Positions 2,526-61,385 of a stretch of 64,000 nt of DNA are shown here, one piece after another. Where the stretch lies: the sequence record NC_031245.1, one strand, 5' to 3'. Made by a program: the position numbers and the translations under genes. The notes under the pieces are model-generated. The model searched no databases. It was not told where the DNA came from and saw nothing but the letters and a program-made list of their open reading frames with translations. The first letter of the stretch is position 1. The number at the start of each line of letters is the position of its first letter.

Positions 2526-2554
2526 GCTTGATTAGGTTTCCCTAGACGTCTATA
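2526..2554 (+). promoter_or_regulatory. phage-specific bipartite promoter motif
   Basis: GCTTGATT-N10-AGACGTCTATA upstream of ligase. Confidence 0.8.
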
Positions 2555-2588
2555 TCTTTGAAGGAAGTTGAAACTAGGGGGTATTAAT

Positions 2589-4448
2589 TTGAGTAACACT
2601 CAAGTATTAGAGTCCAAAATCAAAGAATTGTCTCAAGCCTATTACGGAGGTCAGTCAGTAGTTACCGATGAAACTTTCGATGCATTAGTTGATGAATTGC
2701 GTAAAATTGATCCAGGTAATCCTGTACTTACACAAGTAGGTTGGGGATTTGATGTATCCAAGTCCAACCTAACTAAAGTCACTCATACATACGGTAAGGT
2801 AGGGTCACTCGATAAAGTCAAATCTGTTAGAGGTGTAGTCAAGAATCTTGGTGAAAAGAACTTGATCGGTACTCCTAAGCTAGATGGCTTAACTGTAGTG
2901 GCTTATTATACCAATGGGATTTTTACTCGAGGAGTTACTCGTGGTGACGGAACGACTGGTCAAGACGTTACATACAAAATTAAGGATAAAGTTCCAGCAG
3001 TCATAGGAGAGTTTACTGGAGCGATACGTGGCGAGTTCATCTTACCTCTAACTAATTGGAAGAAGTTCTATCCAGATGCTCCAAGTCCACGTAATACAGC
3101 TTCAGGAGTTATCAATCGTAAGTCGGTTAGTGACGAGGAACTTAGCAGATTCGAATACATCGTCTATCAAGTAGTCGGAGGTAATATAGCATTCGACGAG
3201 AAAGATGATATGTTGTTCTGGTTGAAGGATGCTGGATTCAAAGTAGTCCCATTTGGAGTTTATCCTTCATTGAAATGTGAACCTGAATACATGAAATCAG
3301 AGATCGATAGAATGTCTAAAGAGCTTGACTTACCTCTTGATGGTATGGTGTTGGAGGACAATCTGCTAGTAACTGAAAATGGTAATGGTCGAGTAATTGC
3401 TGACCAAGTAGCTTATAAAGTTCAAAACGATACAGCAGTCGCTAGGATCAAGTCCATTAAGTGGTCACTAACTCGTACAGGAAAGTATACTCCAGTAGCA
3501 ATTCTTGAACCGACCGAGTTATCTGGAGCAACAATTCGTCGAGCTTCTGTGTACAATGCTGAATACGTTGAGAAACATAAACTCGGAGCAGGTGCTCTAG
3601 TAACCATAGTTCGTTCAGGAGAAATTATCCCAGTTGTTTTAGATGTAATCGAACCTAGTGATGAAGCACTTCCTACCCACACGGAGGATGGTGAACCATT
3701 GGTACGTGAAGGTACGGATTTGAAGCTTGCATCCGAATCCAGTAACCACTTGACTCGAGCTCGTCTGATACATTGGATTGAACGTATAGGAGCTACAGAT
3801 GGTATCGGAGGTAAGGTATTAGATAAGGTTCTCGAAGAATTAGGTATCGATAAAATCCAAGATATCTACACTAAAGATTACGACGTAAATTCTCTGCACG
3901 GACTTAATGGTTTCGGTGAATCAACAACTGGTAAGGTTCATGAAATGTTTAGTAAGTTGAAATCCCCAATAACTCCTAAGAGATTCCTAATTGCCTTAGG
4001 ACTTCCTTCACTAGCTGGTAGTTCGGCAGAGAAGTTGATAGCTTCCGTAGGTCTTGATGGAATACTCGAAGGTAAGGTTACTTCTTCCACAAAGATCAAG
4101 GGAGTTAACAAGAATGCAATAGGTGGTATCGTTAGTAACATTGACCTAATCAAAGAAATTGCTAGTCTGGTCAAGTTCAAAGAAGTTGATCCAGCACCTA
4201 CGACTTCTCAGGAAGTTCGATTCAAGGTAGCATTAACTGGTAAGTTGAACAATGGTCGCAAACGATCTGAACTCGAGAAATTACTTAAAGAGAACGGAAT
4301 AGGAACTGGTGATGTTAAATCAGGTACTAAGTATCTGATAACCAACAATCCTGATCCAACTTCGAGTAAGGGTAAGAAAGCTAAGAAGGAAGGCATCGAA
4401 ATTATTACGGAGGATGCATTCCTAGCGAAGTATAACTTGAGCTACTAA
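2589..4448 (+). CDS. ligA: NAD-dependent DNA ligase
   Basis: KLDG adenylation motif, TRGDGTTGQDVT, OB-fold TRTGKYTP..LSGATIRRAS, HhH repeats, C-terminal BRCT; TTG 2589 after GGGGG RBS (track start 2568). Confidence 0.95.
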   Translation: MSNTQVLESKIKELSQAYYGGQSVVTDETFDALVDELRKIDPGNPVLTQVGWGFDVSKSNLTKVTHTYGKVGSLDKVKSVRGVVKNLGEKNLIGTPKLDGLTVVAYYTNGIFTRGVTRGDGTTGQDVTYKIKDKVPAVIGEFTGAIRGEFILPLTNWKKFYPDAPSPRNTASGVINRKSVSDEELSRFEYIVYQVVGGNIAFDEKDDMLFWLKDAGFKVVPFGVYPSLKCEPEYMKSEIDRMSKELDLPLDGMVLEDNLLVTENGNGRVIADQVAYKVQNDTAVARIKSIKWSLTRTGKYTPVAILEPTELSGATIRRASVYNAEYVEKHKLGAGALVTIVRSGEIIPVVLDVIEPSDEALPTHTEDGEPLVREGTDLKLASESSNHLTRARLIHWIERIGATDGIGGKVLDKVLEELGIDKIQDIYTKDYDVNSLHGLNGFGESTTGKVHEMFSKLKSPITPKRFLIALGLPSLAGSSAEKLIASVGLDGILEGKVTSSTKIKGVNKNAIGGIVSNIDLIKEIASLVKFKEVDPAPTTSQEVRFKVALTGKLNNGRKRSELEKLLKENGIGTGDVKSGTKYLITNNPDPTSSKGKKAKKEGIEIITEDAFLAKYNLSY

Positions 4449-4456
4449 GGTAATGC

Positions 4457-4485
4457 GGCATCTACATTAGTAGATGCCTTTATTT
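4457..4485 (+). terminator. intrinsic terminator
   Basis: GGCATCTAC-ATTA-GTAGATGCC then TTTATTT. Confidence 0.75.
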
Positions 4486-4506
4486 GTATTTACAGGAGGA
4501 GACATC

Positions 4507-4863
4507 ATGAAGGGAACTATCAATTTCAGTCATACTGTAGATAGAAAGTCAGAGTGTCAACCAATTCTAGAATTCTCAGGTAAGTCCTCGGTGATAGAAA
4601 TCGATCCGACAGTTAAATCCAGGATCAAGTTTTATAATTCTATCAATGCCTATGATAAGCTATTTGATGTCTTGAGACAAGCATTCGAAAGTACTGTAGT
4701 TGAGAATGAATTGGACAAACTACTGGATGGTTATGACGCATATCGTAAAGGAGGAGAACTTATAGTCAAGTGTACATGTAAGCATCCTACTACTTGCCTA
4801 GGTCGAGTTCTTCATGATATGCTAATTAAACACGAAATAATTAATCTTCAGTGGTATAAGTGA
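4507..4863 (+). CDS. hypothetical protein (C-terminal CxC..C motif, DUF4326-like?)
   Basis: ATG 4507 after AGGAGGAG; LIVKCTCKHPTTCLGRVL. Confidence 0.6.
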   Translation: MKGTINFSHTVDRKSECQPILEFSGKSSVIEIDPTVKSRIKFYNSINAYDKLFDVLRQAFESTVVENELDKLLDGYDAYRKGGELIVKCTCKHPTTCLGRVLHDMLIKHEIINLQWYK

Positions 4864-4892
4864 GCTCTATTCAGGTAACCTAAACGTCTATA
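4864..4892 (+). promoter_or_regulatory. phage-specific bipartite promoter motif
   Basis: GCTCTATT-N10-AAACGTCTATA upstream of ssb-ugd-galU-GT-DGC operon. Confidence 0.8.
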
Positions 4893-4941
4893 TCTGTGGA
4901 GAACTGTTTAACCTTGATAATACTAAGAGGAGGGACTACCT

Positions 4942-9563: not shown

Positions 9564-10092
9564 TTTGCTCATTCTTATCGTAGTTACACTTTATCTTCTA
9601 AGCAAGAATCGTAAATTGAATCAAATGGTATCACTGGATCATTTGACTAACACCTATAACAGACGATACCTCAATAAGTATAGAAAATATAAGGATCAAC
9701 TTCTCAGCGTACTCGTAATCGATATAGATCATTTCAAGTCGGTCAATGATACCTATGGTCATCCTGCTGGAGATCAGATACTATCTGAACTGGCTGGATT
9801 GTTGAAGAGAATAGTGAGAGAAGAGGACTCAGTAGTTCGAATAGGTGGCGAAGAATTCTTGGTGATTCTTAAGAATACCCCTATCGACATTGCTGAGTCC
9901 CTTGCCGTCCAAATTCTACACGCTATCGGTAACCATAGATTCACTTATAACGACAAAGAGATTAGGATTACTGTTAGTATAGGTGTATCAGAGTCCTACA
10001 CTGATATCGATAGAGCAATCAGTGAAGCAGACCTCAATCTGTACCACGCTAAAGAGTCTGGTAGAAATCAAATCAGAGTACACTGTAATTGA
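9541..10092 (+). CDS. membrane-anchored diguanylate cyclase (GGDEF domain)
   Basis: N-terminal TM helix; DHLTNTYNRR, DIDHFKSVNDTYGHPAGD, RxxD I-site (REED), GGEEF, LYHAKESGRN; ATG 9541 after AAGGAGGAG. Confidence 0.95.
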   Translation: MTFIVTFSLLILIVVTLYLLSKNRKLNQMVSLDHLTNTYNRRYLNKYRKYKDQLLSVLVIDIDHFKSVNDTYGHPAGDQILSELAGLLKRIVREEDSVVRIGGEEFLVILKNTPIDIAESLAVQILHAIGNHRFTYNDKEIRITVSIGVSESYTDIDRAISEADLNLYHAKESGRNQIRVHCN

Positions 10093-10110
10093 AGTTCTCA
10101 AACGTCTATA
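10082..10110 (+). promoter_or_regulatory. phage-specific bipartite promoter motif
   Basis: ACTGTAAT-N10-AAACGTCTATA-CTTG-TGAAG. Confidence 0.75.
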
Positions 10111-10141
10111 CTTGTGAAGACATCGAAGGAGGATTACTAAT

Positions 10142-11215: not shown

Positions 11216-11244
11216 GCTGTATTAAGGTGTCATAGACGTTTATA
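11216..11244 (+). promoter_or_regulatory. phage-specific bipartite promoter motif
   Basis: GCTGTATT-N10-AGACGTTTATA. Confidence 0.8.
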
Positions 11245-11276
11245 GTCTTGAGGTTGTTAAACGAAGGAGGATACTT

Positions 11277-15756: not shown

Positions 15757-15785
15757 GCTCGAATCAACCTCCTCGAACGTTTATA
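15757..15785 (+). promoter_or_regulatory. phage-specific bipartite promoter motif
   Basis: GCTCGAAT-N10-GAACGTTTATA. Confidence 0.8.
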
Positions 15786-15844
15786 TTGTTGAGGTGGTGA
15801 TCGAGTTGATCTACATTGAGAAACGTTAAATATGTTGGAGGTAG

Positions 15845-15873
15845 GCTCTAATTAACGAGTTGAAACGTTTATA
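15845..15873 (+). promoter_or_regulatory. phage-specific bipartite promoter motif
   Basis: GCTCTAAT-N10-AAACGTTTATA. Confidence 0.8.
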
Positions 15874-15927
15874 CTGGTGAATGGTGTTGAAGCGTATGAC
15901 ACGTTCGATCAGAACGGAGGGATTGTG

Positions 15928-18685: not shown

Positions 18686-18714
18686 GCTCGATTCAAGTTC
18701 AAAGAACGTCTATA
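18686..18714 (+). promoter_or_regulatory. phage-specific bipartite promoter motif
   Basis: GCTCGATT-N10-GAACGTCTATA. Confidence 0.8.
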
Positions 18715-18802
18715 TCTTTAAGGAGGTGATATGCCCATAGAATGTTAATGGTGCTTTGTGCACGTAATGATACTCAAGTAGCTCCAAGGGAGGAGACTAA
18801 AG

Positions 18803-20806: not shown

Positions 20807-20807
20807 T

Positions 20808-21716: not shown

Positions 21717-21962
21717 ATGCATTTAACAGAACAAGAAGTGGAAGCAATAGTTAAGTCTACTCCAGGAGTGGATACTGTTCGAATTGAACAGCAACCTTCA
21801 ATCGTCTATATCCATACCAATCTGAAGTGGTGGGCACCTAAACTATTGGATGCTAGAAAGATATTCCTCCATTTGAATTATATTTTGGAGGTACGTAAAG
21901 TTGTTGGAATTCAGGTTGCTATACGTCTATACTCTTGGAGAGGTAAACTTCTTGAAGAGTAG
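21717..21962 (+). CDS. hypothetical protein
   Basis: ORF track; GAGGAG RBS. Confidence 0.75.
   Translation: MHLTEQEVEAIVKSTPGVDTVRIEQQPSIVYIHTNLKWWAPKLLDARKIFLHLNYILEVRKVVGIQVAIRLYSWRGKLLEE
21903..21931 (+). promoter_or_regulatory. phage-specific promoter motif (intragenic)
   Basis: GTTGGAAT-N10-ATACGTCTATA-CTCT-TGGAG, inside 21717..21962. Confidence 0.6.
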
Positions 21963-24760: not shown

Positions 24761-25114
24761 ATGGAGAAGAATAGAAGAGATGCATTTAGACTGGAGAACT
24801 TACAGATTTCTTGTAAGTACGGCAACTGTGCTGAAGGAATTACTAACCTAGTAGACATCAGTGCAACTGGTGCTAGACTAGCTGGCAAGATAGGTGATGT
24901 AGGGAGTCCAATAACTATAACTTTCAGAATTATGGATAAAGCATTCATTAGAACTGGAACTATAGTTTGGGTGGATAATCAGTACACTGCAATGAAATTC
25001 TCTAAGACTACTCCTAGAGAAGAATCCGAACTGCTACGTAATATCTTCCAAGAAGATATCAAAAGGAAGTATGAGTCAGAAAATAATCAAGAAAAGTTAG
25101 CTCAAAACGAGTAA
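24761..25114 (+). CDS. stand-alone PilZ-domain c-di-GMP receptor
   Basis: RDAFR (RxxxR) and DISATG (DxSxxG) followed by a beta-barrel pattern (GTIVWV..AMKF). Confidence 0.85.
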   Translation: MEKNRRDAFRLENLQISCKYGNCAEGITNLVDISATGARLAGKIGDVGSPITITFRIMDKAFIRTGTIVWVDNQYTAMKFSKTTPREESELLRNIFQEDIKRKYESENNQEKLAQNE

Positions 25115-25128
25115 GCTAAACGTCTACA
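25100..25128 (+). promoter_or_regulatory. phage-specific promoter motif (variant)
   Basis: GCTCAAAA-N10-AAACGTCTACA. Confidence 0.6.
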
Positions 25129-25175
25129 GTCTTGAGCCAGTTGTTGGCTACAAAACTGTGGAGGTTGATCTCTTT

Positions 25176-25952: not shown

Positions 25953-26270
25953 GTGAAAGATATGAGTAGTGCTGTAGAATCAAGATTGCAGAAATTGATG
26001 TATTCAAATGATCCTAATGTTAAAGCTTTAGGAATTGTTGCTGAGGTAATGATAGAGAACAACAAACAAGTAGTTGAAGCTATTAATAACCTAGCTAGTA
26101 ACTCTCCAGTTGAAGAAACTGAAAGTACTATTACTGTTGAAGCTCTGAACACTAGGATTGACCTAGCAGTAGCAGAGTTAGTTAAAGCTTATGCAGTTAA
26201 GAATCCAGATGAAAAGGATCAACGGATCAAGTTAGCTATTGAAACTCTAGGTAGGAGTCTATTAGGTTAG
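25953..26270 (+). CDS. hypothetical protein
   Basis: ORF track. Confidence 0.75.
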   Translation: MKDMSSAVESRLQKLMYSNDPNVKALGIVAEVMIENNKQVVEAINNLASNSPVEETESTITVEALNTRIDLAVAELVKAYAVKNPDEKDQRIKLAIETLGRSLLG

Positions 26271-26298
26271 CTCGATCCGAGCTTCCTAGACGTCTATA
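26270..26298 (+). promoter_or_regulatory. phage-specific bipartite promoter motif
   Basis: GCTCGATC-N10-AGACGTCTATA-GTTG-TGAAG. Confidence 0.8.
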
Positions 26299-26345
26299 GT
26301 TGTGAAGTTGGTTGAAACTTCAAGCTTACATAGGAGGTAGTATTT

Positions 26346-29326: not shown

Positions 29327-29349
29327 GAGTCAGTATCACTGGCTCTTTT
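29325..29349 (+). terminator. terminator-like hairpin overlapping next promoter
   Basis: AAGAGTCAG-TATCA-CTGGCTCTT-TT. Confidence 0.55.
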
Positions 29350-29370
29350 GGAGTCCCTGAAACGTTTATA
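29342..29370 (+). promoter_or_regulatory. phage-specific bipartite promoter motif
   Basis: GCTCTTTT-N10-AAACGTTTATA. Confidence 0.75.
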
Positions 29371-29406
29371 TGTTTGGAGAGGTGGATAACCAAAGGAGGA
29401 ATCAGT

Positions 29407-36657: not shown

Positions 36658-36686
36658 GCTGGATTACTCCTCTCTGAACGTTTATA
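36658..36686 (+). promoter_or_regulatory. phage-specific bipartite promoter motif
   Basis: GCTGGATT-N10-GAACGTTTATA. Confidence 0.8.
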
Positions 36687-36719
36687 CTTGTGTAAACTGC
36701 TCGGAGAGGAGGATTTATT

Positions 36720-37867: not shown

Positions 37868-37896
37868 GCTGTTTTAAGGGTTATCAGACGTTTATA
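37868..37896 (+). promoter_or_regulatory. phage-specific bipartite promoter motif
   Basis: GCTGTTTT-N10-AGACGTTTATA. Confidence 0.75.
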
Positions 37897-37935
37897 CTCT
37901 TGAGTAAGTTGTTAACTTCGAGGAGGGAGAACATA

Positions 37936-40630: not shown

Positions 40631-40659
40631 GCTTTATTAAGGCTTCTGAAACGTTTATA
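40631..40659 (+). promoter_or_regulatory. phage-specific bipartite promoter motif
   Basis: GCTTTATT-N10-AAACGTTTATA. Confidence 0.8.
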
Positions 40660-40723
40660 CTTGTGAAACGTTGCTCGACTGACTTTCAGTCGAGCTATTT
40701 TAATGTTTAAGGAGGGAATCCTA

Positions 40724-41441: not shown

Positions 41442-41470
41442 GCTTGATACGAGTCCTTCGAACGTCTATA
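41442..41470 (+). promoter_or_regulatory. phage-specific bipartite promoter motif
   Basis: GCTTGATA-N10-GAACGTCTATA. Confidence 0.8.
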
Positions 41471-41517
41471 TTGGTGTAAGTCCTTTTTGGGATAGTAACT
41501 TCAAGGAGTGGAAATAA

Positions 41518-43724: not shown

Positions 43725-43753
43725 GCTGGATTCAGTCCTTTTGAACGTTTATA
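43725..43753 (+). promoter_or_regulatory. phage-specific bipartite promoter motif
   Basis: GCTGGATT-N10-GAACGTTTATA-TTGG-TGAAG. Confidence 0.8.
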
Positions 43754-43810
43754 TTGGTGAAGCAGGTGTATCCTGTAGATAAATAGACATCTAGGAGGAG
43801 AACATACGAT

Positions 43811-45375: not shown

Positions 45376-45402
45376 AAAAGAGGTAGGGTTAATCCCCTAC
45401 CT
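45375..45402 (-). terminator. terminator between convergent genes
   Basis: AGGTAGGG/CCCTACCT stem with A-run on the left, giving a U-tract on the - strand. Confidence 0.7.
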
Positions 45403-46010
45403 TACTCTCCGAAATATGAACGAACAATCTTACGAGCTTTCTTTTTCATAGAACGGTAACTTCCGCTACCAGAACTCGACCATCCGAGCTCTCTCGCCAT
45501 TCTGTGTTCACTGTCTTCCATATGTACCAAACGCTCTGCATCGATTGTTGGCTCAAGTTCAACTGCTTCATTCAATTCAAACACACCTTCGATGTAACCT
45601 TTCATAACAACGAACTTACGTTCCTTAGAACCAATTTCGAATTGTTCAACCATTTCCTTGATTTCGAAGAATTTCTCAGGTTGACGGAAAGGACGTTCAG
45701 CCATCAAAGGATTTCTTGAATTTCCAATTTCTCTTGCCCAAGCAGATACCGTTTCGTCTGAAACCATGTCTGTCTTTGAATCCCAACGACGTCTTTCATA
45801 ACGGTAAACGTCAACCGCTTTATTGTAAGAAGTACGAGCAACAATTTTTTCATTTGGAACTTTCTCGCCATCCGAAATTTCAAGAAGTTTTAACCAAAGT
45901 TCTTGTTCCAAGTCCGAAGTTTCAATTCCAAATTCACGACCGTACTTACGAGAAACACCTTTAACAATTTGAGTAACCTTTTCGCCAAAAACCTCTTTTA
46001 AATTTTCCAT
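45402..46010 (-). CDS. phage RNA polymerase sigma factor (sigma70 family, ECF/group-4-like)
   Basis: region 2-like ETSDLEQELWLKLL..SYNKAVDVYRYERR; region 4-like ERKFVVMKGYIEG..RMARELGW..KKARKIV; ATG 46010 is 9 nt from GGAGG. Confidence 0.75.
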   Translation of the reverse strand: MENLKEVFGEKVTQIVKGVSRKYGREFGIETSDLEQELWLKLLEISDGEKVPNEKIVARTSYNKAVDVYRYERRRWDSKTDMVSDETVSAWAREIGNSRNPLMAERPFRQPEKFFEIKEMVEQFEIGSKERKFVVMKGYIEGVFELNEAVELEPTIDAERLVHMEDSEHRMARELGWSSSGSGSYRSMKKKARKIVRSYFGE

Positions 46011-46288
46011 TATCAAAAACCTCCAAGTTTTAATTTAGCAACCAACCACGGTGCTGTGTTTTTTTTTAGGAGTGGGGGAACCGAATTCGACCCCCACAAG
46101 ACAAGTATGCCCCAAATTCGCTTAAAAAGCACCCCCGATATAACCCCGTATGAGGTGAAATTCCCTGGGTTTCCGCACATTATCGCCCTTAATCACCCCC
46201 AATCGCCCTTTTTCGAATTTGAGGAAAAATTTTCGATAACGAGCTTGAAGCAACTTTCATAGACGTAGGAGCGAATCCCTACCTTATT

Positions 46289-46317
46289 ATAATATACCAC
46301 CTTGCGAACCTTGCCAA
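46289..46317 (-). promoter_or_regulatory. sigmaA-type promoter for the sigma gene
   Basis: TTGGCA-N17-TATTAT on the - strand, overlapping TATAAT. Confidence 0.6.
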
Positions 46318-46421: not shown

Positions 46422-46450
46422 GCTCCTATAAGGGTTGCTAAACGTTTATA
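46422..46450 (+). promoter_or_regulatory. phage-specific bipartite promoter motif
   Basis: GCTCCTAT-N10-AAACGTTTATA-GTTG-TGAAG. Confidence 0.75.
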
Positions 46451-46497
46451 GTTGTGAAGGAAGTTTGGTATAGAAATAATGAACAAAGGATGATTTT

Positions 46498-47787: not shown

Positions 47788-47816
47788 ACTGATATAAGCC
47801 TTTGTAAACGTTTATA
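47788..47816 (+). promoter_or_regulatory. phage-specific bipartite promoter motif
   Basis: ACTGATAT-N10-AAACGTTTATA. Confidence 0.7.
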
Positions 47817-47845
47817 CTGTTGAATTCGTAAGGAGAGTGAACATC

Positions 47846-49093: not shown

Positions 49094-49122
49094 ACTTGAT
49101 TCACGTTCTCCAGACGTTTATA
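49094..49122 (+). promoter_or_regulatory. phage-specific bipartite promoter motif
   Basis: ACTTGATT-N10-AGACGTTTATA-CCTG-TGAAG. Confidence 0.8.
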
Positions 49123-49173
49123 CCTGTGAAGTAAGTGCGACATGGTTCGCTGATAAAACTGGAGGTAATATTT

Positions 49174-51182: not shown

Positions 51183-51211
51183 GCTTGTAAGGAGTTCGTG
51201 GGACGTTTATA
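51183..51211 (+). promoter_or_regulatory. phage-specific bipartite promoter motif
   Basis: GCTTGTAA-N10-GGACGTTTATA. Confidence 0.7.
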
Positions 51212-51231
51212 GTCGTGGAGGAGGGTTTTGT

Positions 51232-53651: not shown

Positions 53652-54074
53652 ATGATTACTTTAGATCAAATTAAGTTAGCAGCAGAAGAAGCATCTGTAG
53701 AAGGTATCACTGTAGCAGCTGAGTTCGTAGCTGACACTGCAGATACTTATGGACCACAACATAATGCACAATTCCGTATCTTCAAGAAAGGTGGATTCTC
53801 ACAAGGGATGACTACCTACGGAATGGGTGGATTTGACGGTATGAAAATCCATGACGCTATGGCACCATTCACTCGTGACGTACGTTATGACTTCACTCAA
53901 TTAGATCCACATATCCGATTCCGTATCGAGCAAGGTACTGTTGAGTTCGATCAGGAATTTGTGACTAAGATCCTTAAGGCTGTAGTACGTAGCTTAGGTG
54001 GAGTCTATCCTGAAGCACCACCAGTAACTCCTCCAAGTAATGGTGGCACTGATGGTGGAACTCAAACTCCGTAA
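53652..54074 (+). CDS. hypothetical protein (possible virion protein)
   Basis: GGGAGG RBS; Pro/Gly-rich tail; lies upstream of tail-like genes. Confidence 0.75.
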   Translation: MITLDQIKLAAEEASVEGITVAAEFVADTADTYGPQHNAQFRIFKKGGFSQGMTTYGMGGFDGMKIHDAMAPFTRDVRYDFTQLDPHIRFRIEQGTVEFDQEFVTKILKAVVRSLGGVYPEAPPVTPPSNGGTDGGTQTP

Positions 54075-54086
54075 TAGGTGACTTAA

Positions 54087-54662: not shown

Positions 54663-54676
54663 AATAATTAGGAGGA

Positions 54677-55039
54677 GTGCTCATGTTATCAGTAACACTC
54701 AGAAATGAGTTATTGGATCACGCTCTACAAGGATCAACACTGTACTTGGCATTACTAGTTGATGATGGAGCGGGAGGTAAAGTCGAGCTAGCTACTCCTA
54801 GCTATGCACGTCAAGAAATCACATTTGATGTAGCATCAAATGGTGAAGCTAAACTATCAGCTGATGTCTTATTCCCTCTAGCTACAGAGGACTGGGGTGC
54901 AATCAAATCATTCTATATATTTGATGTACCTACTGGTGGAGACTTCAAAATAGCTGGAGACTTTAGTACTGCTAAAGCTGTAGGTGTAGATGACCAGTTC
55001 AAAGTAGGAGCAGGTAAGCTCGCAATTAAATTACTTTAA
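54677..55039 (+). CDS. phage tail-fibre/minor-tail-like protein
   Basis: LYLAL..ELATPSYARQEITF..FPLATEDWGAI..IFDVPTGG pattern common in tail modules. Confidence 0.65.
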   Translation: MLMLSVTLRNELLDHALQGSTLYLALLVDDGAGGKVELATPSYARQEITFDVASNGEAKLSADVLFPLATEDWGAIKSFYIFDVPTGGDFKIAGDFSTAKAVGVDDQFKVGAGKLAIKLL

Positions 55040-55044
55040 CTCAT

Positions 55045-55077
55045 TAGGGTAGGGACTTATAATCCCTACCCTATTTT
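55045..55077 (+). terminator. intrinsic terminator
   Basis: TAGGGTAGGGA-N7-TCCCTACCCTA-TTTT. Confidence 0.8.
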
Positions 55078-55097
55078 AATTAGGTAGGTGATTAGTA

Positions 55098-56120
55098 TTG
55101 ATAGTTGAAGTAGAAGCAACATTAGAGTCAGGTAGTGAATCCCCCGCTCAAGGTAGTGTATTACTCAACTCAGGTGGTACGATGACAGCTATTTCATTTG
55201 GTAACTCACCAAGTGTACTAGTAAGGAATGGGGATGGAATAGCTGAATCAGGCAGTCAATTAACTAGTGAATCGACTAGTGTAGTTAGGCAGTCAAGTGG
55301 ACTAGTCGAATCCGACAGTGAATCTACTAGTGAAAGTATTGGACTAGTCAAATATGGTAGCGGAGAAGTCGAATCAACTAGTGAATCAACTAGTCAATCA
55401 GCTATCTTATTAGGCTCACGTGCAGAGGCTATTGAATTGACTAGTGTAGTCGAAGCTACTGGTAACGTCGACTCGATGAAGGATAACGTAGTCCTAGTTA
55501 ATAGCTTAGTCGAAGCGTCGGGAATGATTCTCTATTCAGGTGAATCTACTAGTAAATCGACTAGTAAAGTAGGTGTGAGCGGAGGCATTATTATAATGGA
55601 GGAATCCGATATAGAGTCCCGCTCCACTACTGAATCAGCTAGTGCAGTATTAGCTACTGGGGAGTCGACTACTGAATTAGCTATTACGATTGAAGCTGAA
55701 GGTGAACTAGTAGCTGATGTATTACCAGTAGTCTATCTTAAGGGTAAGTTAGATATGAGAACTGACGACCTAATGCTCACTAATCAAAATATGGAAGTAT
55801 TCTCAGGAGACAGTCGACGTGTAGTAGTTACAGTCGAGGATGAACTAGGTAAACCTGCCCATCTCGAGTATGCTACTATAGAGTGGACAATTCGTAGAGC
55901 AGGACGTACTGAGTTTATGCATGCAGTCGATGAATTACTCTATAAATCATCAAGGAGCGGGAGCATTAAGATAGGTACTGAGAGCTATAATCAATTCGAG
56001 TTCAATATCAATTCACGTGAAACTGAATCCCTTACTGGTCAATACTTCCATCGTGCAATACTAACCGACCCTAAGGGTAATCGATCAACTTTATTCTCAG
56101 GTATTCTACAATTCATGTAA
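55098..56120 (+). CDS. Ser/Glu-rich repeat virion protein with C-terminal BppU-like/Ig-like domain
   Basis: repeated ES(T/D/G)SESTS; C-terminal GDSRRVVVTVED..IEWTI..YFHRAILTDPKG. Confidence 0.6.
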   Translation: MIVEVEATLESGSESPAQGSVLLNSGGTMTAISFGNSPSVLVRNGDGIAESGSQLTSESTSVVRQSSGLVESDSESTSESIGLVKYGSGEVESTSESTSQSAILLGSRAEAIELTSVVEATGNVDSMKDNVVLVNSLVEASGMILYSGESTSKSTSKVGVSGGIIIMEESDIESRSTTESASAVLATGESTTELAITIEAEGELVADVLPVVYLKGKLDMRTDDLMLTNQNMEVFSGDSRRVVVTVEDELGKPAHLEYATIEWTIRRAGRTEFMHAVDELLYKSSRSGSIKIGTESYNQFEFNINSRETESLTGQYFHRAILTDPKGNRSTLFSGILQFM

Positions 56121-56122
56121 TA

Positions 56123-56146
56123 GGATGGCTAGTCAGCTAGCCGTCC
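56123..56146 (+). terminator. terminator-like hairpin
   Basis: GGATGGCTAG-TCAG-CTAGCCGTCC. Confidence 0.55.
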
Positions 56147-56207
56147 ATTATTAGTACTATTAGTAATAATAATTATCAATAAGGTAGGAATTAGGGGAGG
56201 AATTTTC

Positions 56208-56417
56208 ATGGCATACTTAGGTACGTATATAGGGGAGCTTAAAGGCATACTAACAGAGAAGGGTAGTATTGCAGGAGTATTCGAGGACTTCAAGAAAGAT
56301 AGAGGATTAGTAGGTAAGGTAGAACTCACTGAAGAAATAAAGAAAGACTTCTCAGAATACTTTGCAGATAAAGTAGCAGAGAGGACTAATGCTAAACTAA
56401 AAGAATCCGCTCATTAA
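56208..56417 (+). CDS. hypothetical protein
   Basis: ORF track; GGGGAGGA RBS. Confidence 0.75.
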   Translation: MAYLGTYIGELKGILTEKGSIAGVFEDFKKDRGLVGKVELTEEIKKDFSEYFADKVAERTNAKLKESAH

Positions 56418-56437
56418 GATAGTCCTAGACGTCTATA
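56409..56437 (+). promoter_or_regulatory. phage-specific bipartite promoter motif
   Basis: GCTCATTA-N10-AGACGTCTATA. Confidence 0.7.
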
Positions 56438-56516
56438 CTTCCGAGTGGGACAATAAGGTCAACACTATCAGTTAAGGATTCAGCTACGCGGATTAAGACG
56501 AATTGAGACGAACTAC

Positions 56517-56545
56517 GCTGGATTCCAATCTGATAAACGTCTATA
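56517..56545 (+). promoter_or_regulatory. phage-specific bipartite promoter motif
   Basis: GCTGGATT-N10-AAACGTCTATA-GTTG-TGAAG. Confidence 0.8.
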
Positions 56546-56665
56546 GTTGTGAAGGTGGCTACGAAGGTCACCTAGTTTTATTTTAAGCATCACGTGAACA
56601 TTGCATCTTAGAATCGGCAGCTAGATAGTTCATCATCGCAAACTACTAGCGGAGGGAAGAAATTT

Positions 56666-57119: not shown

Positions 57120-57148
57120 GCTGTCTCACACTGTCTCAAACGTCTATA
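57120..57148 (+). promoter_or_regulatory. phage-specific bipartite promoter motif
   Basis: GCTGTCTC-N10-AAACGTCTATA-GTGG-TGAAG. Confidence 0.75.
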
Positions 57149-57154
57149 GTGGTG

Positions 57155-57224
57155 AAGGGTGCTCGGCTGCCTCACTTTCAGTCCGACACCTGATTAGGTA
57201 GCTCTTCATTGAGCTACCTTTCTT
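57155..57224 (+). ncRNA. candidate small RNA/leader: hairpin plus terminator hairpin
   Basis: bulged 11-bp stem 57158-57190 and 9-bp stem 57196-57219 + TTCTT directly after the promoter. Confidence 0.45.
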
Positions 57225-58540: not shown

Positions 58541-58834
58541 GTGGCAACTATTATGATACCTGAAGAACATGAAGAAGTAACTTATAGAGATGTGGAGCGT
58601 GTAGTGAGAGCTATCATGGATGAGGAGAAGAAGTTGAGTTATCAATTTCCAGTTTATGCTTTGACTAACTGGAACTATTTGACTACGAAGTATCCTGAAC
58701 TCTATAGGGTTATAACTCGATTCACCTATCCTAATCCAGAGAACTATAAGAAGTATCTGCAACTAGTATCTTCATGGGTCGATGAACTTCAATGGACATG
58801 GTCAGCGGAGGATAGAAATGGACAGACTAACTAA
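58541..58834 (+). CDS. hypothetical protein
   Basis: ORF track; AAGGAGGAG RBS. Confidence 0.8.
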   Translation: MATIMIPEEHEEVTYRDVERVVRAIMDEEKKLSYQFPVYALTNWNYLTTKYPELYRVITRFTYPNPENYKKYLQLVSSWVDELQWTWSAEDRNGQTN

Positions 58835-58920
58835 AGTTCTATGTGTAGTCGCATTGGTAGTCATAATATTCACACTCGGCTATCTTGTAGGTAAAGGTTA
58901 TTACTAAGGAGGATTTATCC

Positions 58921-59538
58921 ATGAATATACTAAGATACATGCCAATTAAGGCTCAGAGACAGTGGTTAGATATAATTATGCGTATGCAAGGTATGGGTAA
59001 CATTTCAGTTGTATCTAAAGACCGTAGAGACAATCCTGAGTATGGAGATATCTACTTCGAGTTCAAGAAAGGTCGTACAGCAGTTACAGTTATGTTCCAG
59101 TTCGATAAGAATGACAAGCAGATACTGAGGACTGTAGGGTACATCCGTCATGAAGGTAATATTGCAGTTGAACACTTTACTCCAGATGAAAGGTTCGACT
59201 TCAGTAAGCTACGTAGATGGTTGAACTTATATGAGATAAAATCAGTCCCGCTCGATATATATCTTAGTAACGAGAAGTTAATGTCTCATACTCTTATGGA
59301 GGAGCAGATGAATAACTATGGACTGCCACCTGAAGTAGCTCAAGCTATTAGGTACATAGTGGAGCGGGAGAATGAGCCACTCAAAGCTATATTCGATCCC
59401 CACTACAGACTAAAGAACTATCCTGAGCAAAACGATATACTCATGGATTATATTTCAATTGGAGTAGAAATCAGCGTAGCTCGACTGGACAGTGTAATCG
59501 ATTATGCTCGTAGTTTAATTACAAAGGAGGACATCTAA
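58921..59538 (+). CDS. hypothetical protein
   Basis: ORF track; AAGGAGG RBS. Confidence 0.85.
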   Translation: MNILRYMPIKAQRQWLDIIMRMQGMGNISVVSKDRRDNPEYGDIYFEFKKGRTAVTVMFQFDKNDKQILRTVGYIRHEGNIAVEHFTPDERFDFSKLRRWLNLYEIKSVPLDIYLSNEKLMSHTLMEEQMNNYGLPPEVAQAIRYIVERENEPLKAIFDPHYRLKNYPEQNDILMDYISIGVEISVARLDSVIDYARSLITKEDI

Positions 59539-59539
59539 T

Positions 59540-60442
59540 ATGTCACGTGATAATTCAATCGTAATGTCAGATACAGAACTAGCTCGTAGGTTAGCAAAGA
59601 ACGTAGACAATATCACTAAGAAACTTGAGGATAAAGATCTTATGAACTATGTAGACTCTATGCTCACTCTAAATCGAGGATTCACTCTACGTCAGTGGAT
59701 CCGAAAGGTCGATAAATACATCGCTAAGATGATGGGTATACGTCAACAAATAGTTCTAGCTGATGAAATGCCTACTGAAGAACTGGATAAGTTAGTCGAA
59801 GACTACACACTTACTGTTGACAATATTGATATCGTTAAGTACATCATAGCTACTAGGTTTAATCCAGGTGAGCGTGAAGAGGACAATTCATCCGTAGTCC
59901 GAGTTAAACTTGACGATAATGTGGAGCGGATTGACCTACCAACTCACGAAGGTTACGAGTACAAGGGTAAAGTTTACCACGAGTACATGCTAGTTTATGG
60001 TAAAGGAAGACATGGTCGTAGACGTATGATAGTTGACTCAGAGGAAGAAGCTATTCGTAAGTTAGAGTTGTATGCTAAGAAGTACGACTTAGAGCTTACT
60101 GTCTATGCAATCGTCAAGTCTAATATGCCTAAAGGTCTAGCTCCAGCATTGATGAAAGCTGTAGACAATATGGACACTGTAGTTATTGATGAAAGTCGTC
60201 GAGGATGGGTATCTGAGAAGGATACGACTAATGAAGAAGTCAATCACCTAGACGATAAACATACTTCAACTGTCGCTAAGCTATTCAAGGAGAAGTTCCC
60301 TGAAGCTGAGAAAATAGTTGGTATGAGATTGATTGACTATAAAGAAGACACTGATACCTATGTTGTATCTATCTCTAGGACTGACAAGAAGTACGAAATA
60401 CCTTATTCAGAAGTAAAGGATAAGCTCACTCAACTTGGGTGA
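59540..60442 (+). CDS. hypothetical protein
   Basis: 300-aa ORF; AAGGAGG RBS. Confidence 0.85.
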   Translation: MSRDNSIVMSDTELARRLAKNVDNITKKLEDKDLMNYVDSMLTLNRGFTLRQWIRKVDKYIAKMMGIRQQIVLADEMPTEELDKLVEDYTLTVDNIDIVKYIIATRFNPGEREEDNSSVVRVKLDDNVERIDLPTHEGYEYKGKVYHEYMLVYGKGRHGRRRMIVDSEEEAIRKLELYAKKYDLELTVYAIVKSNMPKGLAPALMKAVDNMDTVVIDESRRGWVSEKDTTNEEVNHLDDKHTSTVAKLFKEKFPEAEKIVGMRLIDYKEDTDTYVVSISRTDKKYEIPYSEVKDKLTQLG

Positions 60443-60728
60443 GCTATTTCCCTTTAACTAGCTAGTACGATTCATTCGCCTCAATAACCCGCCTAATTGG
60501 ACTCCTTACTCCATGCGAATAACCTTCTAGATAGAGCCAATTGGCTCTGCTAATCACGATAGTTAAGCTTACGCCCGATTGCCCGTAGGCTTGATAAACC
60601 CTTGTTAAATAGGTTAATAATGACCTAGAAAGAAAGCAGAACTAGTAAGTCTATTTCGTTAGACCTGCTCGCTAGGCTTATCCTTTAGGTACTTGCGTAT
60701 CGATCAAACTTTAGGAGGAATTAATAGC

Positions 60729-60791
60729 ATGTTAGAATTTATCCACGAGTATGCTAGTCAGGCATTTAAACATGACGTGAGTCCATCTTAA
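60729..60791 (+). CDS. 20-aa peptide MLEFIHEYASQAFKHDVSPS
   Basis: AGGAGGA RBS; stop abuts the RBS of the next gene. Confidence 0.35.
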   Translation: MLEFIHEYASQAFKHDVSPS

Positions 60792-60805
60792 GGAGGTAGA
60801 TACCA

Positions 60806-61339
60806 ATGCCGATTCACTTTTTACGAGAATATAAGTCAGCTCCGCTCTACCATGGTACAGATTACCATTCAGCTTACTTGATACTTCAGACTAATATGCT
60901 CAAAGCTAATACATCCAATGAGACTGAGACTCATGGAGTTTCTTTCACTAGGAATAAGAACGAGTGGTACTATAAGTTTGTATTCGTAGTTGATCAAGCT
61001 AAGCTTGCTAACAATCATAAGGTAGCTCCAGTTTATAGGCATGGTATTGCAGGACGTGATCTAGCGGAAGAGCGAGTACCTTATGATATCCGTAACCTGA
61101 ATAAACTATTAATTGAAGTCGACGTCAGAGGAGATACTAACTTGAGGATTATACGGAAGAAGCTTCTGAAGATGACTCCTGAGAACTTAGTTACTTTACC
61201 GTCAAATAGTATACTCCAGAGTTACCACTACCTATACCTAGCTATTAAGCTAGCTATAAAGAATAGGATTAAGTTAGGTAAGAACTTGCTCAAGGTTAAG
61301 GCTATGTACGAAGAGATACTTTCAGCTAAATTTAATTAA
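60806..61339 (+). CDS. ADP-ribosyltransferase-fold-like protein
   Basis: LYHGT, GVSFTR, AEERV motif order. Confidence 0.55.
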   Translation: MPIHFLREYKSAPLYHGTDYHSAYLILQTNMLKANTSNETETHGVSFTRNKNEWYYKFVFVVDQAKLANNHKVAPVYRHGIAGRDLAEERVPYDIRNLNKLLIEVDVRGDTNLRIIRKKLLKMTPENLVTLPSNSILQSYHYLYLAIKLAIKNRIKLGKNLLKVKAMYEEILSAKFN

Positions 61340-61356
61340 AACTACTCGGCTAGTCA

Positions 61357-61385
61357 GCTTGATTCGAGTTGTCCAGACGTTTATA
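61357..61385 (+). promoter_or_regulatory. phage-specific bipartite promoter motif
   Basis: GCTTGATT-N10-AGACGTTTATA. Confidence 0.8.

What the first reader, a model, noticed from the sequence alone, without database searches (positions are those of the whole stretch)
2526..61385. A 24-copy bipartite promoter motif with invariant 10-nt spacer defines a phage regulon
Seen: GCTNNATT-N10-RRACGTYTATA-N4-TG(A/T/G)AG-like elements at core positions 2544, 4882, 10100, 11234, 15775, 15863, 18704, 21921, 25118, 26288, 29360, 36676, 37886, 40649, 41460, 43743, 46440, 47806, 49112, 51201, 56427, 56535, 57138 and 61375. All are on +, nearly all lie just upstream of an RBS and often right after a terminator. 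The spacer was 10 nt in every copy I counted. None precedes the virion-like block 53652-56417 or 58541-61339. Inference: a middle-type promoter read by a non-host specificity factor; it matches no Bacillus sigma consensus I recall.
Basis: seen in the sequence. Interest (0 to 1): 0.7.

Follow-up and report, generated by a model that had tools for sequence, protein, structure and literature searches.

The report
Phage SP-15 sigma-factor promoter regulon
The 24 repeats are real: they belong to a set of 65 near-identical promoters of Bacillus phage SP-15, placed before replication and DNA-modification genes and never before virion genes, and most likely read by a divergent sigma factor that the phage itself encodes, which is a familiar kind of phage control whose promoter motif and sigma family I found described nowhere.

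Summary
The window is Bacillus phage SP-15 (NC_031245.1), genome 124001-188000.

**Observation: confirmed.**
- All 24 listed sites exist, all on the + strand.
- They share the layout GCTNNATT-N10-RRACGTYTATA-N4-TG.
- The 9-mer core occurs 26 times against 2.4 expected.
- A matrix built from the 24 sites finds exactly those 24 in the window and 65 in the whole genome. No other position scores in between.

**What the sites look like.**
- They lie a median 43 nt before a start codon that has a ribosome-binding site.
- None occurs in the structural and lysis block.

**Relatives keep the motif.** It has the same spacing and the same absence from virion genes in:
- Listeria phage LIS04: 54-56 sites.
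- Bacillus phage HSE3: 37 sites.
- Metagenome contigs.

Before orthologous genes only the two boxes are conserved: 71% and 89% identity, against 30% in the flanks.

**Likely reader.**
- Every carrier encodes a small divergent sigma-70-like family. One paralog, SP15_217, lies in the window at 45402-46010 on the minus strand and is annotated 'hypothetical'.
- The most distant clade keeps the -10 half but has a different -35 box.
- The sigma genes carry host-type promoter blocks, and most carry the motif as well.

**Best reading:** host sigma-A, then phage sigma, then this delayed-early/middle regulon.

**Status:** a new member of a known kind. No transcript data exist.

The parts
2526..2563 (+). 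Promoter motif site (core 2544) before SP15_143, NAD-dependent DNA ligase (start 2589)
   Evidence: 46.8 bits. 29 nt from column +16 to the start codon. Terminator-like hairpin 7 nt upstream. The LIS04 ligase ortholog also has a site.
4864..4901 (+). Promoter motif site (core 4882) before SP15_145, single-stranded DNA-binding protein (start 4942)
   Evidence: 41.4 bits. 44 nt to the start codon. The LIS04 ortholog has a site.
10082..10119 (+). Promoter motif site (core 10100) before SP15_151, CDP-glycerol glycerophosphotransferase (start 10142)
   Evidence: 41.5 bits. 26 nt to the start codon. The LIS04 ortholog has a site. The first box reads ACT, not GCT.
11216..11253 (+). Promoter motif site (core 11234) before SP15_152, glycosyl transferase (start 11277)
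   Evidence: 41.8 bits. 27 nt to the start codon.
15757..15794 (+). Promoter motif site (core 15775), the first of a tandem pair before SP15_157 (GIY-YIG endonuclease) and SP15_158 (helicase)
   Evidence: 48.6 bits. Directly follows the annotated terminator at 15720-15754.
15845..15882 (+). Promoter motif site (core 15863), the second of the tandem pair before SP15_157/158 (start 15925)
   Evidence: 38.7 bits. 46 nt to the start codon.
18686..18723 (+). Promoter motif site (core 18704) before SP15_159/160 and SP15_161, the FtsK/SpoIIIE-like gene
   Evidence: 37.6 bits. 22 nt to the start codon at 18742. Columns +15/+16 read TA, not TG.
21903..21940 (+). Promoter motif site (core 21921) inside the 3' end of SP15_164, before SP15_165 acetyltransferase (start 22015)
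   Evidence: 34.3 bits. 39 nt here are identical to LIS04 138048-138086, where a site also sits.
25100..25137 (+). Promoter motif site (core 25118) before SP15_171 (start 25176)
   Evidence: 34.0 bits. 42 nt to the start codon. Column +9 is C.
26270..26307 (+). Promoter motif site (core 26288) before SP15_173 (start 26346)
   Evidence: 52.1 bits, the best score in the genome. 42 nt to the start codon.
29342..29379 (+). Promoter motif site (core 29360) before SP15_180 (start 29407)
   Evidence: 39.4 bits. Follows the annotated terminator at 29327-29349.
36658..36695 (+). Promoter motif site (core 36676) before SP15_196 (start 36720)
   Evidence: 36.4 bits. 28 nt to the start codon.
37868..37905 (+). 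Promoter motif site (core 37886) before SP15_199 (start 37936)
   Evidence: 42.4 bits. 34 nt to the start codon.
40631..40668 (+). Promoter motif site (core 40649) before SP15_205 (start 40724)
   Evidence: 46.0 bits. A 10-pair hairpin (-16.8 kcal/mol) begins 9 nt after column +16.
41442..41479 (+). Promoter motif site (core 41460) before SP15_207 (start 41518)
   Evidence: 38.3 bits. 42 nt to the start codon.
43725..43762 (+). Promoter motif site (core 43743) before SP15_214 (start 43811)
   Evidence: 47.2 bits. The -35 box lies within the annotated terminator hairpin at 43714-43742.
46422..46459 (+). Promoter motif site (core 46440) before SP15_218, clamp loader (start 46498). It diverges from the sigma gene SP15_217.
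   Evidence: 40.5 bits. 42 nt to the start codon.
47788..47825 (+). Promoter motif site (core 47806) before SP15_219, dCMP deaminase (start 47846)
   Evidence: 36.1 bits. 24 nt to the start codon.
49094..49131 (+). Promoter motif site (core 49112) before SP15_222 (start 49174)
   Evidence: 43.1 bits. 46 nt to the start codon.
51183..51220 (+). Promoter motif site (core 51201) before SP15_226 (start 51232)
   Evidence: 41.8 bits. Follows the annotated terminator at 51141-51170.
56409..56446 (+). Promoter motif site (core 56427), the weakest in the window, far upstream of SP15_237 (start 56666)
   Evidence: 29.8 bits. Columns +15/+16 read CG. 223 nt to the start codon.
56517..56554 (+). Promoter motif site (core 56535) before SP15_237 (start 56666)
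   Evidence: 47.2 bits. A hairpin plus T-run begins 2 nt after column +16 (-12.1 kcal/mol).
57120..57157 (+). Promoter motif site (core 57138) before SP15_238 (start 57330)
   Evidence: 42.8 bits. 176 nt leader. A structured 5' end is predicted (-14.1 kcal/mol).
61357..61394 (+). Promoter motif site (core 61375) before SP15_244 (start 61473)
   Evidence: 43.3 bits. 82 nt to the start codon.
45402..46010 (-). SP15_217, annotated 'hypothetical protein'. It is a 202-aa divergent sigma-70-family protein, 70% identical to SP15_078, which lies outside the window at genome 76605-77303. It is the candidate reader of the motif.
   Evidence: Returned as P0005 in the homolog search with SP15_078. Sigma70_r2 hits in 19 of 23 family members. 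AlphaFold2 gives two helical domains, pLDDT 77.7. The 28 best PDB fold matches are all sigma factors, but none is significant (best E 0.12). Homologs are in LIS04 and HSE3. In the ERR12380611 contig the equivalent gene is also on the strand opposite to its neighbours, close to the clamp-loader gene.
46104..46132 (-). Host-type (sigma-A-like) promoter block about 100 nt before the SP15_217 start codon. Its sequence is conserved before five of the six sigma genes of the SP-15 clade and before those of the distant clade. The sixth, ERR P0007, keeps only the block's downstream end. Here it is degenerate: 2 of 6 and 4 of 6 matches with a 17-nt spacer.
   Evidence: Alignment of the sigma-gene upstream regions. 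Hexamer table. The homologous block in locus L012 is a 12-of-12 match to the TTGACA-17-TATAAT pattern used by the promoter scan. It overlaps the annotated small ORF SP15_217A (46013-46180, minus strand).
46289..46317 (-). Second sigma-A-like match (10 of 12, 17-nt spacer) further upstream of SP15_217
   Evidence: Promoter scan. Weak evidence: 10-of-12 matches occur at chance level genome-wide, 40 on + and 44 on -.
45381..45402 (-). Terminator-like hairpin closing the SP15_217 transcription unit
   Evidence: Scan. Annotated in the record as a rho-independent terminator.

Best explanation
The 24 elements are promoters. They form the window's share of a 65-member promoter class of phage SP-15.

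Proposed mechanism:
1. Host core RNA polymerase is directed to these promoters by a phage-encoded, highly divergent sigma-70-family (ECF-like, two-domain) protein. SP-15 has two paralogs: SP15_217 in the window and SP15_078 outside it.
2. The C-terminal domain of this sigma reads the upstream box (GCT..ATT, columns -18 to -11).
3. The N-terminal domain reads the CGT-containing downstream box (RRACGTYTATA).
4. Transcription starts about 5-7 nt after that box, at the conserved T-G step, probably at the G or the next purine.
5. The sigma genes are first transcribed from host sigma-A-type promoters. The phage sigma then turns on the replication, nucleotide-metabolism, DNA-modification and many small genes, and boosts its own synthesis, because SP15_078 carries the motif too.
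6. Virion and lysis genes lack the motif and need something else.

Shown: the motif, its statistics, its placement, its conservation, and its co-occurrence with the sigma family.
Inferred: promoter activity, the start point, which protein reads it, and the timing.
For: Statistics:
- 26 against 2.4 expected for the core 9-mer.
- 65 sites of about 40 bits with a clean score gap.
- 61 sites lie on + and 4 on -, each oriented with the gene behind it. The median distance to a start codon with a ribosome-binding site is 43 nt.

Gene class: no site lies between genome 19435 and 74695, which runs from the ribonucleotide reductase genes and the virion structural genes (prohead protease onward) through holin. 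LIS04 has the same gap at 35748-85297 and HSE3 at 36211-89396.

Footprint: for 20 orthologous SP-15/LIS04 gene pairs:

| Region | Identity |
|---|---|
| Flanks | 30% |
| Spacer | 38% |
| Upstream box | 71% |
| Downstream box | 89% |
| T-G step | 85% |

Co-occurrence: the sigma family is present in SP-15 (two copies), LIS04 (two), HSE3 (two) and every metagenome contig that has the motif.

Co-variation:
- Contigs whose sigma is only 34-39% identical keep CGTTTAYA-N4-TG but have GAGTNAAT at the same distance. There are 11 exact matches in 6 loci from these contigs, all on the sigma strand. None occurs in the other 126 loci held.
- The N-terminal domain is better conserved towards that clade (46-52%) than the last C-terminal helices (27-32%).
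- gp217 residues H169, R170 and R186 are kept where the box keeps ATT. They are replaced in HSE3 gp103 and in the distant clade.

Sigma nature:
- Sigma70_r2 hits in 19 of 23 members.
- TIGR02937 at E 0.0013 for SP15_078.
- Fold matches are all sigma factors.

Cascade:
- The motif sits before SP15_078, LIS04_17, LIS04_95, the ERR contig's P0007, HSE3 gp103 and the L012 sigma gene.
- A conserved host-type promoter block precedes the sigma genes. It is a perfect consensus match in L012.

Literature: B. subtilis ECF promoters have CGT in the -10 element, adhere closely to consensus, and most ECF sigmas regulate their own genes (PMC5758882).
Against: - There are no transcript 5' ends and no expression time course for SP-15 or any relative.
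- The sigma assignment is weak by sequence. Pfam hits are mostly below the curated cut-off, no region-4 model matches, a profile of the family finds no PDB sequence, and the Foldseek E-values are not significant.
- The -35 box lacks the AAC typical of ECF promoters.
- LIS04 sigmas are only 37-41% identical to gp217 in the last helices yet read (if they do) almost the same box. The domain-level co-variation is therefore suggestive only.
- The window's paralog SP15_217 has no motif. Its host-type promoter blocks are poor or at chance level.
- I found no enrichment of canonical sigma-A promoters on the coding strand. The early class is therefore undefined, and these promoters could be earlier than 'middle'.
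Confidence: 0.65

Rival explanations
1. Host sigma-A holoenzyme reads these promoters, alone or with a phage activator that binds the upstream box. This would be sigma appropriation in the style of T4 middle promoters. On this reading the phage sigma paralogs serve another class, for example late genes.
For: - Columns +7 to +12 read TATANT (T at +12 in 50 of 65 sites). That is 5 of 6 of the sigma-A -10 hexamer used by the promoter scan.
- 11 of 65 SP-15 sites have TTGA at the position a 17-nt spacer requires. Five score 10-11 of 12 as sigma-A promoters, and one is annotated as such in the record.
- No separate set of canonical sigma-A promoters is enriched on the coding strand.
- SP15_078 is itself behind the motif, as a late-factor gene under an earlier class would be.
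Against: - The invariant letters (G, C at -18/-17 and A, C, G, T at +2 to +5) lie outside the sigma-A hexamers.
- The TG of an extended -10 is absent.
- In LIS04 only 1 of 54 sites has TTGA.
- The distant clade's box bears no likeness to the sigma-A -35 hexamer, although sigma-A is conserved among Firmicutes.
- No bipartite motif was found in the late block that the phage sigma could read instead.
- No MotA- or AsiA-like gene is annotated. This was not tested further.
Confidence: 0.2
2. A phage-encoded RNA polymerase, single-subunit or split multi-subunit, reads the motif, as in T7-like or AR9/phiKZ-like phages.
For: The sequence conservation is very high (about 40 bits), more typical of phage polymerase promoters than of ordinary bacterial ones.
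Against: - No polymerase gene is annotated in SP-15, LIS04 or HSE3, apart from an 'alpha subunit' label on a 205-aa HSE3 protein.
- Pfam found no polymerase domain in the ten largest unannotated SP-15 proteins.
- The element is bipartite with a variable 10-nt spacer and -35/-10 geometry.
Confidence: 0.04
3. The element is not a promoter but another signal: an operator of a dimeric DNA-binding protein, a terminator part, or a replication or packaging signal.
For: - The ACGT centre is palindromic.
- Several sites overlap terminator hairpins.
Against: - There is a strict orientation with the downstream gene and a fixed short distance to ribosome-binding sites.
- The columns flanking ACGT show no palindromic co-variation (Fisher p 0.78 in SP-15).
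- Only 5-7 of 24 window sites follow a terminator.
- 65 dispersed copies do not fit an origin or a packaging site.
Confidence: 0.03

Closest known systems
Phage SPO1 sigma cascade: host sigma-A for early genes, Gp28 for middle, Gp34 (with Gp33) for late (PMC13401047, PMC9429907)
   Same: - A large lytic B. subtilis myovirus with modified thymine in its DNA.
- Host core polymerase is kept and re-aimed by small phage-encoded sigma proteins.
- The replication genes sit behind a phage-specific, highly uniform promoter class.
   Different: - There is no detectable sequence relation. tblastn of gp217 against 50,697 phage records finds only SP-15, LIS04 and HSE3.
- The family has its own PHROG (37530, 'unknown function').
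- SP-15 has two similar paralogs rather than two unrelated sigmas.
- I could not fetch the published SPO1 promoter consensus with the tools, so the letters were not compared.
Bacterial ECF (group 4) sigma factors and their promoters, for example B. subtilis sigma-W, -X, -M (PMC5758882)
   Same: - A small two-domain sigma.
- CGT in the -10 element.
- Promoters very close to consensus.
- The motif lies before the sigma's own gene.
   Different: - There is no AAC in the -35 box.
- No Pfam region-4 match.
- The HSE3 members were explicitly not captured by the ECF re-classification, because they show only a sigma-2 domain or no domain (PMC7826278).
- A profile of the family finds only 203 clusters among 1.84 billion representatives. 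It is therefore a small separate clade.
- No anti-sigma partner is evident.
T4 middle promoters (MotA/AsiA sigma appropriation)
   Same: - A phage-specific upstream box replaces the host -35 element.
- The downstream box still resembles the host -10 hexamer.
- SP-15's virion genes are T4-like.
   Different: - No MotA- or AsiA-like gene is annotated.
- The invariant ACGT abutting the -10 has no counterpart that I could verify.
- The comparison rests on general knowledge, not on a tool result.

Membership tests
Sigma-70-family (ECF-like) dependent promoter | Two conserved boxes at about -35 and -10 with a fixed spacer, oriented with the gene | tested here: met
   The boxes are at columns -18 to -11 and 0 to +10. 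The spacer is 10 nt in 65 of 65 sites. All sites are co-oriented with the downstream gene.
Sigma-70-family (ECF-like) dependent promoter | CGT in the -10 element (B. subtilis ECF promoters, PMC5758882) | tested here: met
   C, G and T at +3 to +5 in 65 of 65 SP-15 sites, 54 of 54 LIS04 sites and 37 of 37 HSE3 sites, where these letters were fixed by the search pattern.
Sigma-70-family (ECF-like) dependent promoter | AAC in the -35 element (PMC5758882) | tested here: not met
   The upstream box is GCT..ATT, and no AAC column pattern is present.
Sigma-70-family (ECF-like) dependent promoter | [quoted passage not shown] | tested here: inconclusive
   - Sigma70_r2 hits in 19 of 23 family members, best E 1.5e-5, mostly under the cut-off.
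- No region-4 model hit.
- The AlphaFold2 model has two helical domains.
- The 28 top fold matches are sigma factors, but the best E is 0.12.
- A profile of the family finds no PDB sequence.
Sigma-70-family (ECF-like) dependent promoter | The motif lies upstream of the sigma's own gene (autoregulation) | tested here: met
   Sites lie before SP15_078, LIS04_17, LIS04_95, ERR contig P0007, HSE3 gp103 and the L012 sigma gene. This is not met for SP15_217 itself.
Sigma-70-family (ECF-like) dependent promoter | Transcripts start a few bases downstream of the -10 box and depend on the sigma | not testable with these tools
   No RNA data are available. The only indirect sign is slightly more 5'-proximal structure after column +16 (25% against 13% of controls at -8 kcal/mol or lower, p 0.005).
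Host sigma-A promoter | TTGACA, 16-18 nt, TATAAT (the pattern used by the promoter scan) | tested here: not met
   The -10 fits in 5 of 6 places. The -35 fits in about 2-3 of 6. TTGA occurs in 11 of 65 SP-15 sites and 1 of 54 LIS04 sites. The invariant columns lie outside both hexamers.
SPO1 Gp28/Gp34-type phage sigma system | Homology of the sigma to Gp28 or Gp34 | tested here: not met
   tblastn of gp217 at E up to 0.01 finds no SPO1-like phage. The family has a separate PHROG.
SPO1 Gp28/Gp34-type phage sigma system | A promoter consensus equal to the SPO1 middle or late consensus | not tested
   The SPO1 genome paper is not held, and no tool gave me the consensus. I did not compare from memory.
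Phage RNA polymerase promoter | A phage-encoded RNA polymerase in the genome | tested here: not met
   None is annotated. There is no polymerase Pfam domain in the ten largest unannotated proteins. The test is limited, because not all proteins were scanned.

The most novel reading that the evidence does not exclude
The sigma family may be an adaptation to hypermodified DNA. About half of SP-15's thymines carry a bulky hypermodification (PMC5977210). The promoter has five thymine columns that are invariant or nearly so on the top strand (-16, +5, +7, +9, +15), and more on the bottom strand. The phage sigma might recognise the modified bases in these boxes, or require their local absence. Promoter use would then distinguish replicated or modified phage DNA from unmodified DNA, and this could itself set the timing. 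A bolder variant is that the sigma is carried in the virion, which would explain why no separate early promoter class is visible.
Probability: 0.12. Interest if true: 0.8.

Novelty: new member of a known kind. Interest (0 to 1): 0.5.

Why it matters
It gives phage SP-15, and with it a small lineage that infects Bacillus subtilis, B. cereus and Listeria, its first transcription map:
- 65 predicted start regions;
- a division into motif-driven and motif-free genes;
- a named candidate regulator that the record calls 'hypothetical'.

The sigma family falls outside the current ECF classification. Here it comes with a ready-made natural set of more than 150 target sites in three isolates, plus a clade with an altered -35 box. 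That makes the rules of its DNA recognition directly readable from sequence and structure.

These phages also have hypermodified thymine. The invariant T and A columns of the promoter therefore offer a defined place to ask how a polymerase reads such DNA.

Tried and rejected
**Searches that found nothing**
- Rfam on the whole window: no family.
- tRNA scan: none.
- Motif scan of IMG/VR: only SP-15 itself gave several matches per contig. All other contigs had single, chance-level hits.
- Profile of the sigma family against PDB sequences: nothing.
- Foldseek: sigma factors on top but not significant.
- Text search for the core 8- and 9-mers: only primers and unrelated promoters. The sigma-I promoters in PMC4711584 have a different -10 element.
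- Neither genome paper mentions promoters or sigma factors.

**Searches that were inconclusive**
- A late-gene promoter. No bipartite motif was found. There is only a short AATACAAT-type element just before the ribosome-binding site of a few late genes, kept in LIS04.
- Canonical sigma-A promoters: 40 on + and 44 on -, which is chance level.
- An RNA structure in the conserved stretch before the sigma genes. The consensus fold is -2.2 kcal/mol with no convincing co-variation. The stretch is better explained as a conserved host-type promoter block.

**Ideas rejected**
- Palindromic (dimer-operator) reading of RRACGTYT: no co-variation.
- A phage RNA polymerase among the large unknown proteins: none.
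- A third sigma-like gene of the ERR12380611 contig has no homolog in SP-15 or LIS04.

- One search printed the commonest letter per column beside the counts. I used the counts only.

Full report
**Identity of the window.** The window matches Bacillus phage SP-15 (NC_031245.1 / KT624200.1, 221,908 bp, genus Thornevirus) at 100% identity over the 12-kb stretch searched. It is identical over its whole length to bases 124001-188000 of the record, on the + strand. I fetched the whole genome as six loci. The record annotates terminators and four promoter features defined by likeness to the sigma-A consensus, but not the motif as such. One of those features (genome 217398-217426) overlaps a motif site. 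The genome paper (PMC5977210) contains no occurrence of 'promoter', 'sigma' or 'transcription'.

- All 24 listed positions carry the element, all on +.
- The core ACGTYTAYA occurs 26 times against 2.4 expected, and 25 of these are on +.
- A matrix built from the 24 sites recovers exactly these 24 in the window and 65 in the genome.
- All 65 score above 21 bits and nothing scores between 8 and 21. The shuffled genomes reach 17 at most.

Column counts over the 65 sites:

| Column(s) | Base | Share |
|---|---|---|
| -18 / -17 / -16 | G / C / T | 62 / 63 / 65 |
| -13 | A | 48 |
| -11 | T | 47 |
| +2 | A | 63 |
| +3 to +5 | C, G, T | 65 each |
| +6 | T or C | 43 / 22 |
| +7 to +10 | T, A, T, A | 65 / 65 / 62 / 65 |
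| +15 | T | 59 |
| +16 | G | 63 |

Purines follow at +17 and +18. The total is about 40 bits. The 10-nt spacer shows little sequence conservation and its length is fixed. One possible 11-nt variant lies at genome 86677.

**Placement.**
- 61 sites are on + and 4 on -. The four minus-strand sites stand before the only minus-strand gene cluster outside the window (genes 073-077).
- The median distance from column +16 to a start codon with a ribosome-binding site is 43 nt.
- In the window the genes served include DNA ligase, SSB, sugar-nucleotide and glycosyl/glycerophosphate transferases (candidate DNA-modification genes), a helicase, an FtsK-like protein, the clamp loader, dCMP deaminase and many small unknown genes.
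- No site lies between genome 19435 and 74695, which runs from the ribonucleotide reductase genes and the virion structural genes (prohead protease onward) through holin.
- Only 5-7 of the 24 window sites follow a terminator directly (with the record's own features).
- In some sites the upstream box lies inside the terminator hairpin, for example 43743.

**Relatives.** SP-15 is no longer an orphan.

| Genome | Sites | Gap with no site |
|---|---|---|
| SP-15 (222 kb) | 65 | 19435-74695 |
| Listeria phage LIS04 (OQ999172.1, 181.6 kb) | 54-56, same layout and spacer | 35748-85297 |
| Bacillus phage vB_BceM-HSE3 (MF418016.1, 124 kb, B. cereus) | 37 (0.66 expected), 36 on + | 36211-89396 |

- A 69-kb metagenome contig (ERR12380611) shows the same motif.
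- 23 of the SP-15 sites precede genes whose homolog in LIS04 also has a site, at 27-71% protein identity.
- For 20 of these gene pairs, anchored on the motif, identity between the two phages is 30% in both flanks, 38% in the spacer, 71% in the upstream box, 89% in the downstream box and 85% at the T-G step. This is a clean phylogenetic footprint.

**The candidate reader.**
- SP15_078 (outside the window) is annotated as a sigma-70/ECF-type protein. Its Pfam and NCBIfam hits are weak: Sigma70_r2 at E 0.003 and TIGR02937 at E 0.0013.
- The homolog search returned a 70%-identical paralog encoded by the window itself. This is SP15_217, at 45402-46010 on the minus strand, annotated 'hypothetical'.
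- LIS04 and HSE3 each have two family members. The ERR contig also has two.
- One copy always sits between the lysis genes and the topoisomerase genes.
- 19 of 23 family members hit Sigma70_r2.
- The AlphaFold2 model (pLDDT 77.7) has two helical domains joined by a disordered linker.
- Its 28 best PDB matches are all sigma factors, led by M. tuberculosis ECF sigma-H. None is significant.
- A profile of the family finds only 203 clusters in 1.84 billion representatives.
- The ECF re-classification paper notes that HSE3 Gp01 and Gp103 were not captured (PMC7826278).

**The link between the sigma and the motif.**
- Contigs whose sigma is 34-39% identical (loci L012-L014, L129-L131) keep CGTTTAYA-N4-TG. 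At the same distance they carry GAGTNAAT instead of GCT..ATT.
- There are 11 exact matches in those 6 loci, all on the sigma strand and before genes. None occurs in the other 126 loci held.
- Towards that clade the N-terminal domain is 46-52% identical and the last C-terminal helices 27-32%.
- Invariant N-terminal residues (N63, K64, A65, D67, Y69, R70, R74, R75 of gp217) go with the invariant downstream box.
- H169, R170 and R186 are kept in the sigmas of phages whose box keeps ATT. They are replaced in HSE3 gp103, whose box has lost ATT, and in the distant clade.
- This evidence is suggestive and not decisive. LIS04's C-terminal helices are also only 37-41% identical to gp217.

**Cascade.**
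- The motif precedes the sigma gene in SP-15 (078), in LIS04 (both copies), in the ERR contig (P0007), in HSE3 (gp103) and in L012.
- A block of about 50 nt some 60-105 nt before the start codon is conserved before five of the six sigma genes of the SP-15 clade. The sixth (ERR P0007) keeps only its downstream end.
- This block is homologous to a host-type promoter. In L012 it is a 12-of-12 match to the sigma-A pattern, and in L012 and L130 an 11-of-12 match. In the SP-15 clade it is degenerate.
- I read this as follows: host sigma-A makes the first sigma mRNA, and the phage sigma then drives the regulon and itself. This is the logic described for SPO1 (PMC13401047, PMC9429907), although the proteins are unrelated.

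**Rivals.**
- Host sigma-A alone is unlikely. The invariant columns lie outside its hexamers, and TTGA is present in only 11 of 65 SP-15 sites and 1 of 54 LIS04 sites. The distant clade's box is unlike the sigma-A -35 hexamer.
- A sigma-A plus activator model cannot be excluded.
- No phage polymerase was found.
- A dimer-operator reading fails the co-variation test.

**Limits.**
- No expression data exist.
- The early and late promoter classes remain undefined.

Noticed in passing
window 52790-53650: A gene-free stretch of about 860 nt. It holds five direct copies of a 32-37-nt unit at 53350, 53391, 53472, 53543 and 53585, plus short CCTAAT-rich repeats at 52871-53110. No promoter motif lies in it. 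It sits directly before SP15_232-236, where SP15_234 (54683-55039) hits a PHROG 'head protein' family (E 1.6e-23). It looks iteron-like and could be an origin, a packaging site or a regulator array.
   Followed up: partly
window 46013-46180 (minus strand); L007:8472-8612: The annotated small ORFs SP15_217A and LIS04_16 overlap the conserved promoter and leader block before the sigma genes. The 9-mer TGGTTGGTT just upstream of the ribosome-binding site is invariant before all six sigma genes of three phages. These ORFs may not be genes. The invariant 9-mer is unexplained, and no convincing RNA fold was found.
   Followed up: partly
window 40665-40700 and 56551-56585: Right after two motif sites (cores 40649 and 56535) there is a strong hairpin followed by a T-run. 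The transcripts might stop after about 35-45 nt, giving an attenuator or a small RNA. Sites 56427, 56535 and 57138 all have unusually long leaders (115-223 nt).
   Followed up: no
L003:34966, L004:4178 and 11417 (SP-15 genome 34966, 49178, 56417); LIS04 genome 64365-64401 and 71043-71101: A short AATACAAT-type element sits 2-10 nt before the ribosome-binding site of late (tail and baseplate) genes. It is kept at the orthologous places in LIS04. It is a candidate late promoter or processing signal.
   Followed up: partly
L006:29398-29426 (SP-15 genome 217398-217426): The record's annotated 'promoter similar to the sigma-A consensus' is in fact one of the 65 motif sites (core 217414). Five motif sites score 10-11 of 12 as sigma-A promoters and could be read by both holoenzymes.
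   Followed up: partly
L004:41650-41690 (SP-15 genome about 86655-86690): One possible motif copy with an 11-nt instead of a 10-nt spacer lies inside the 3' end of SP15_088, about 130 nt before the replicative helicase gene SP15_089.
   Followed up: no
L132:7243-8034 (minus strand): The ERR12380611 relative carries a third sigma-like gene with a clear Sigma70_r4_2 domain (E 9e-8). It has no homolog in SP-15 or LIS04. HSE3 also has an extra sporulation-type sigma (gp017).
   Followed up: partly
L003:3750-3950 (SP-15 genome 3750-3950): A tandem array of a unit of about 15-17 nt rich in TATAA and GTACT lies between a terminator and a motif site (core 4100).
   Followed up: no
window 9541-10092 and 24761-25114: The phage encodes a GGDEF diguanylate cyclase (SP15_150) and a PilZ-domain protein (SP15_170), according to the record's annotation. 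Both lie in motif-driven transcription units. This would amount to a c-di-GMP signalling pair in a lytic phage.
   Followed up: no
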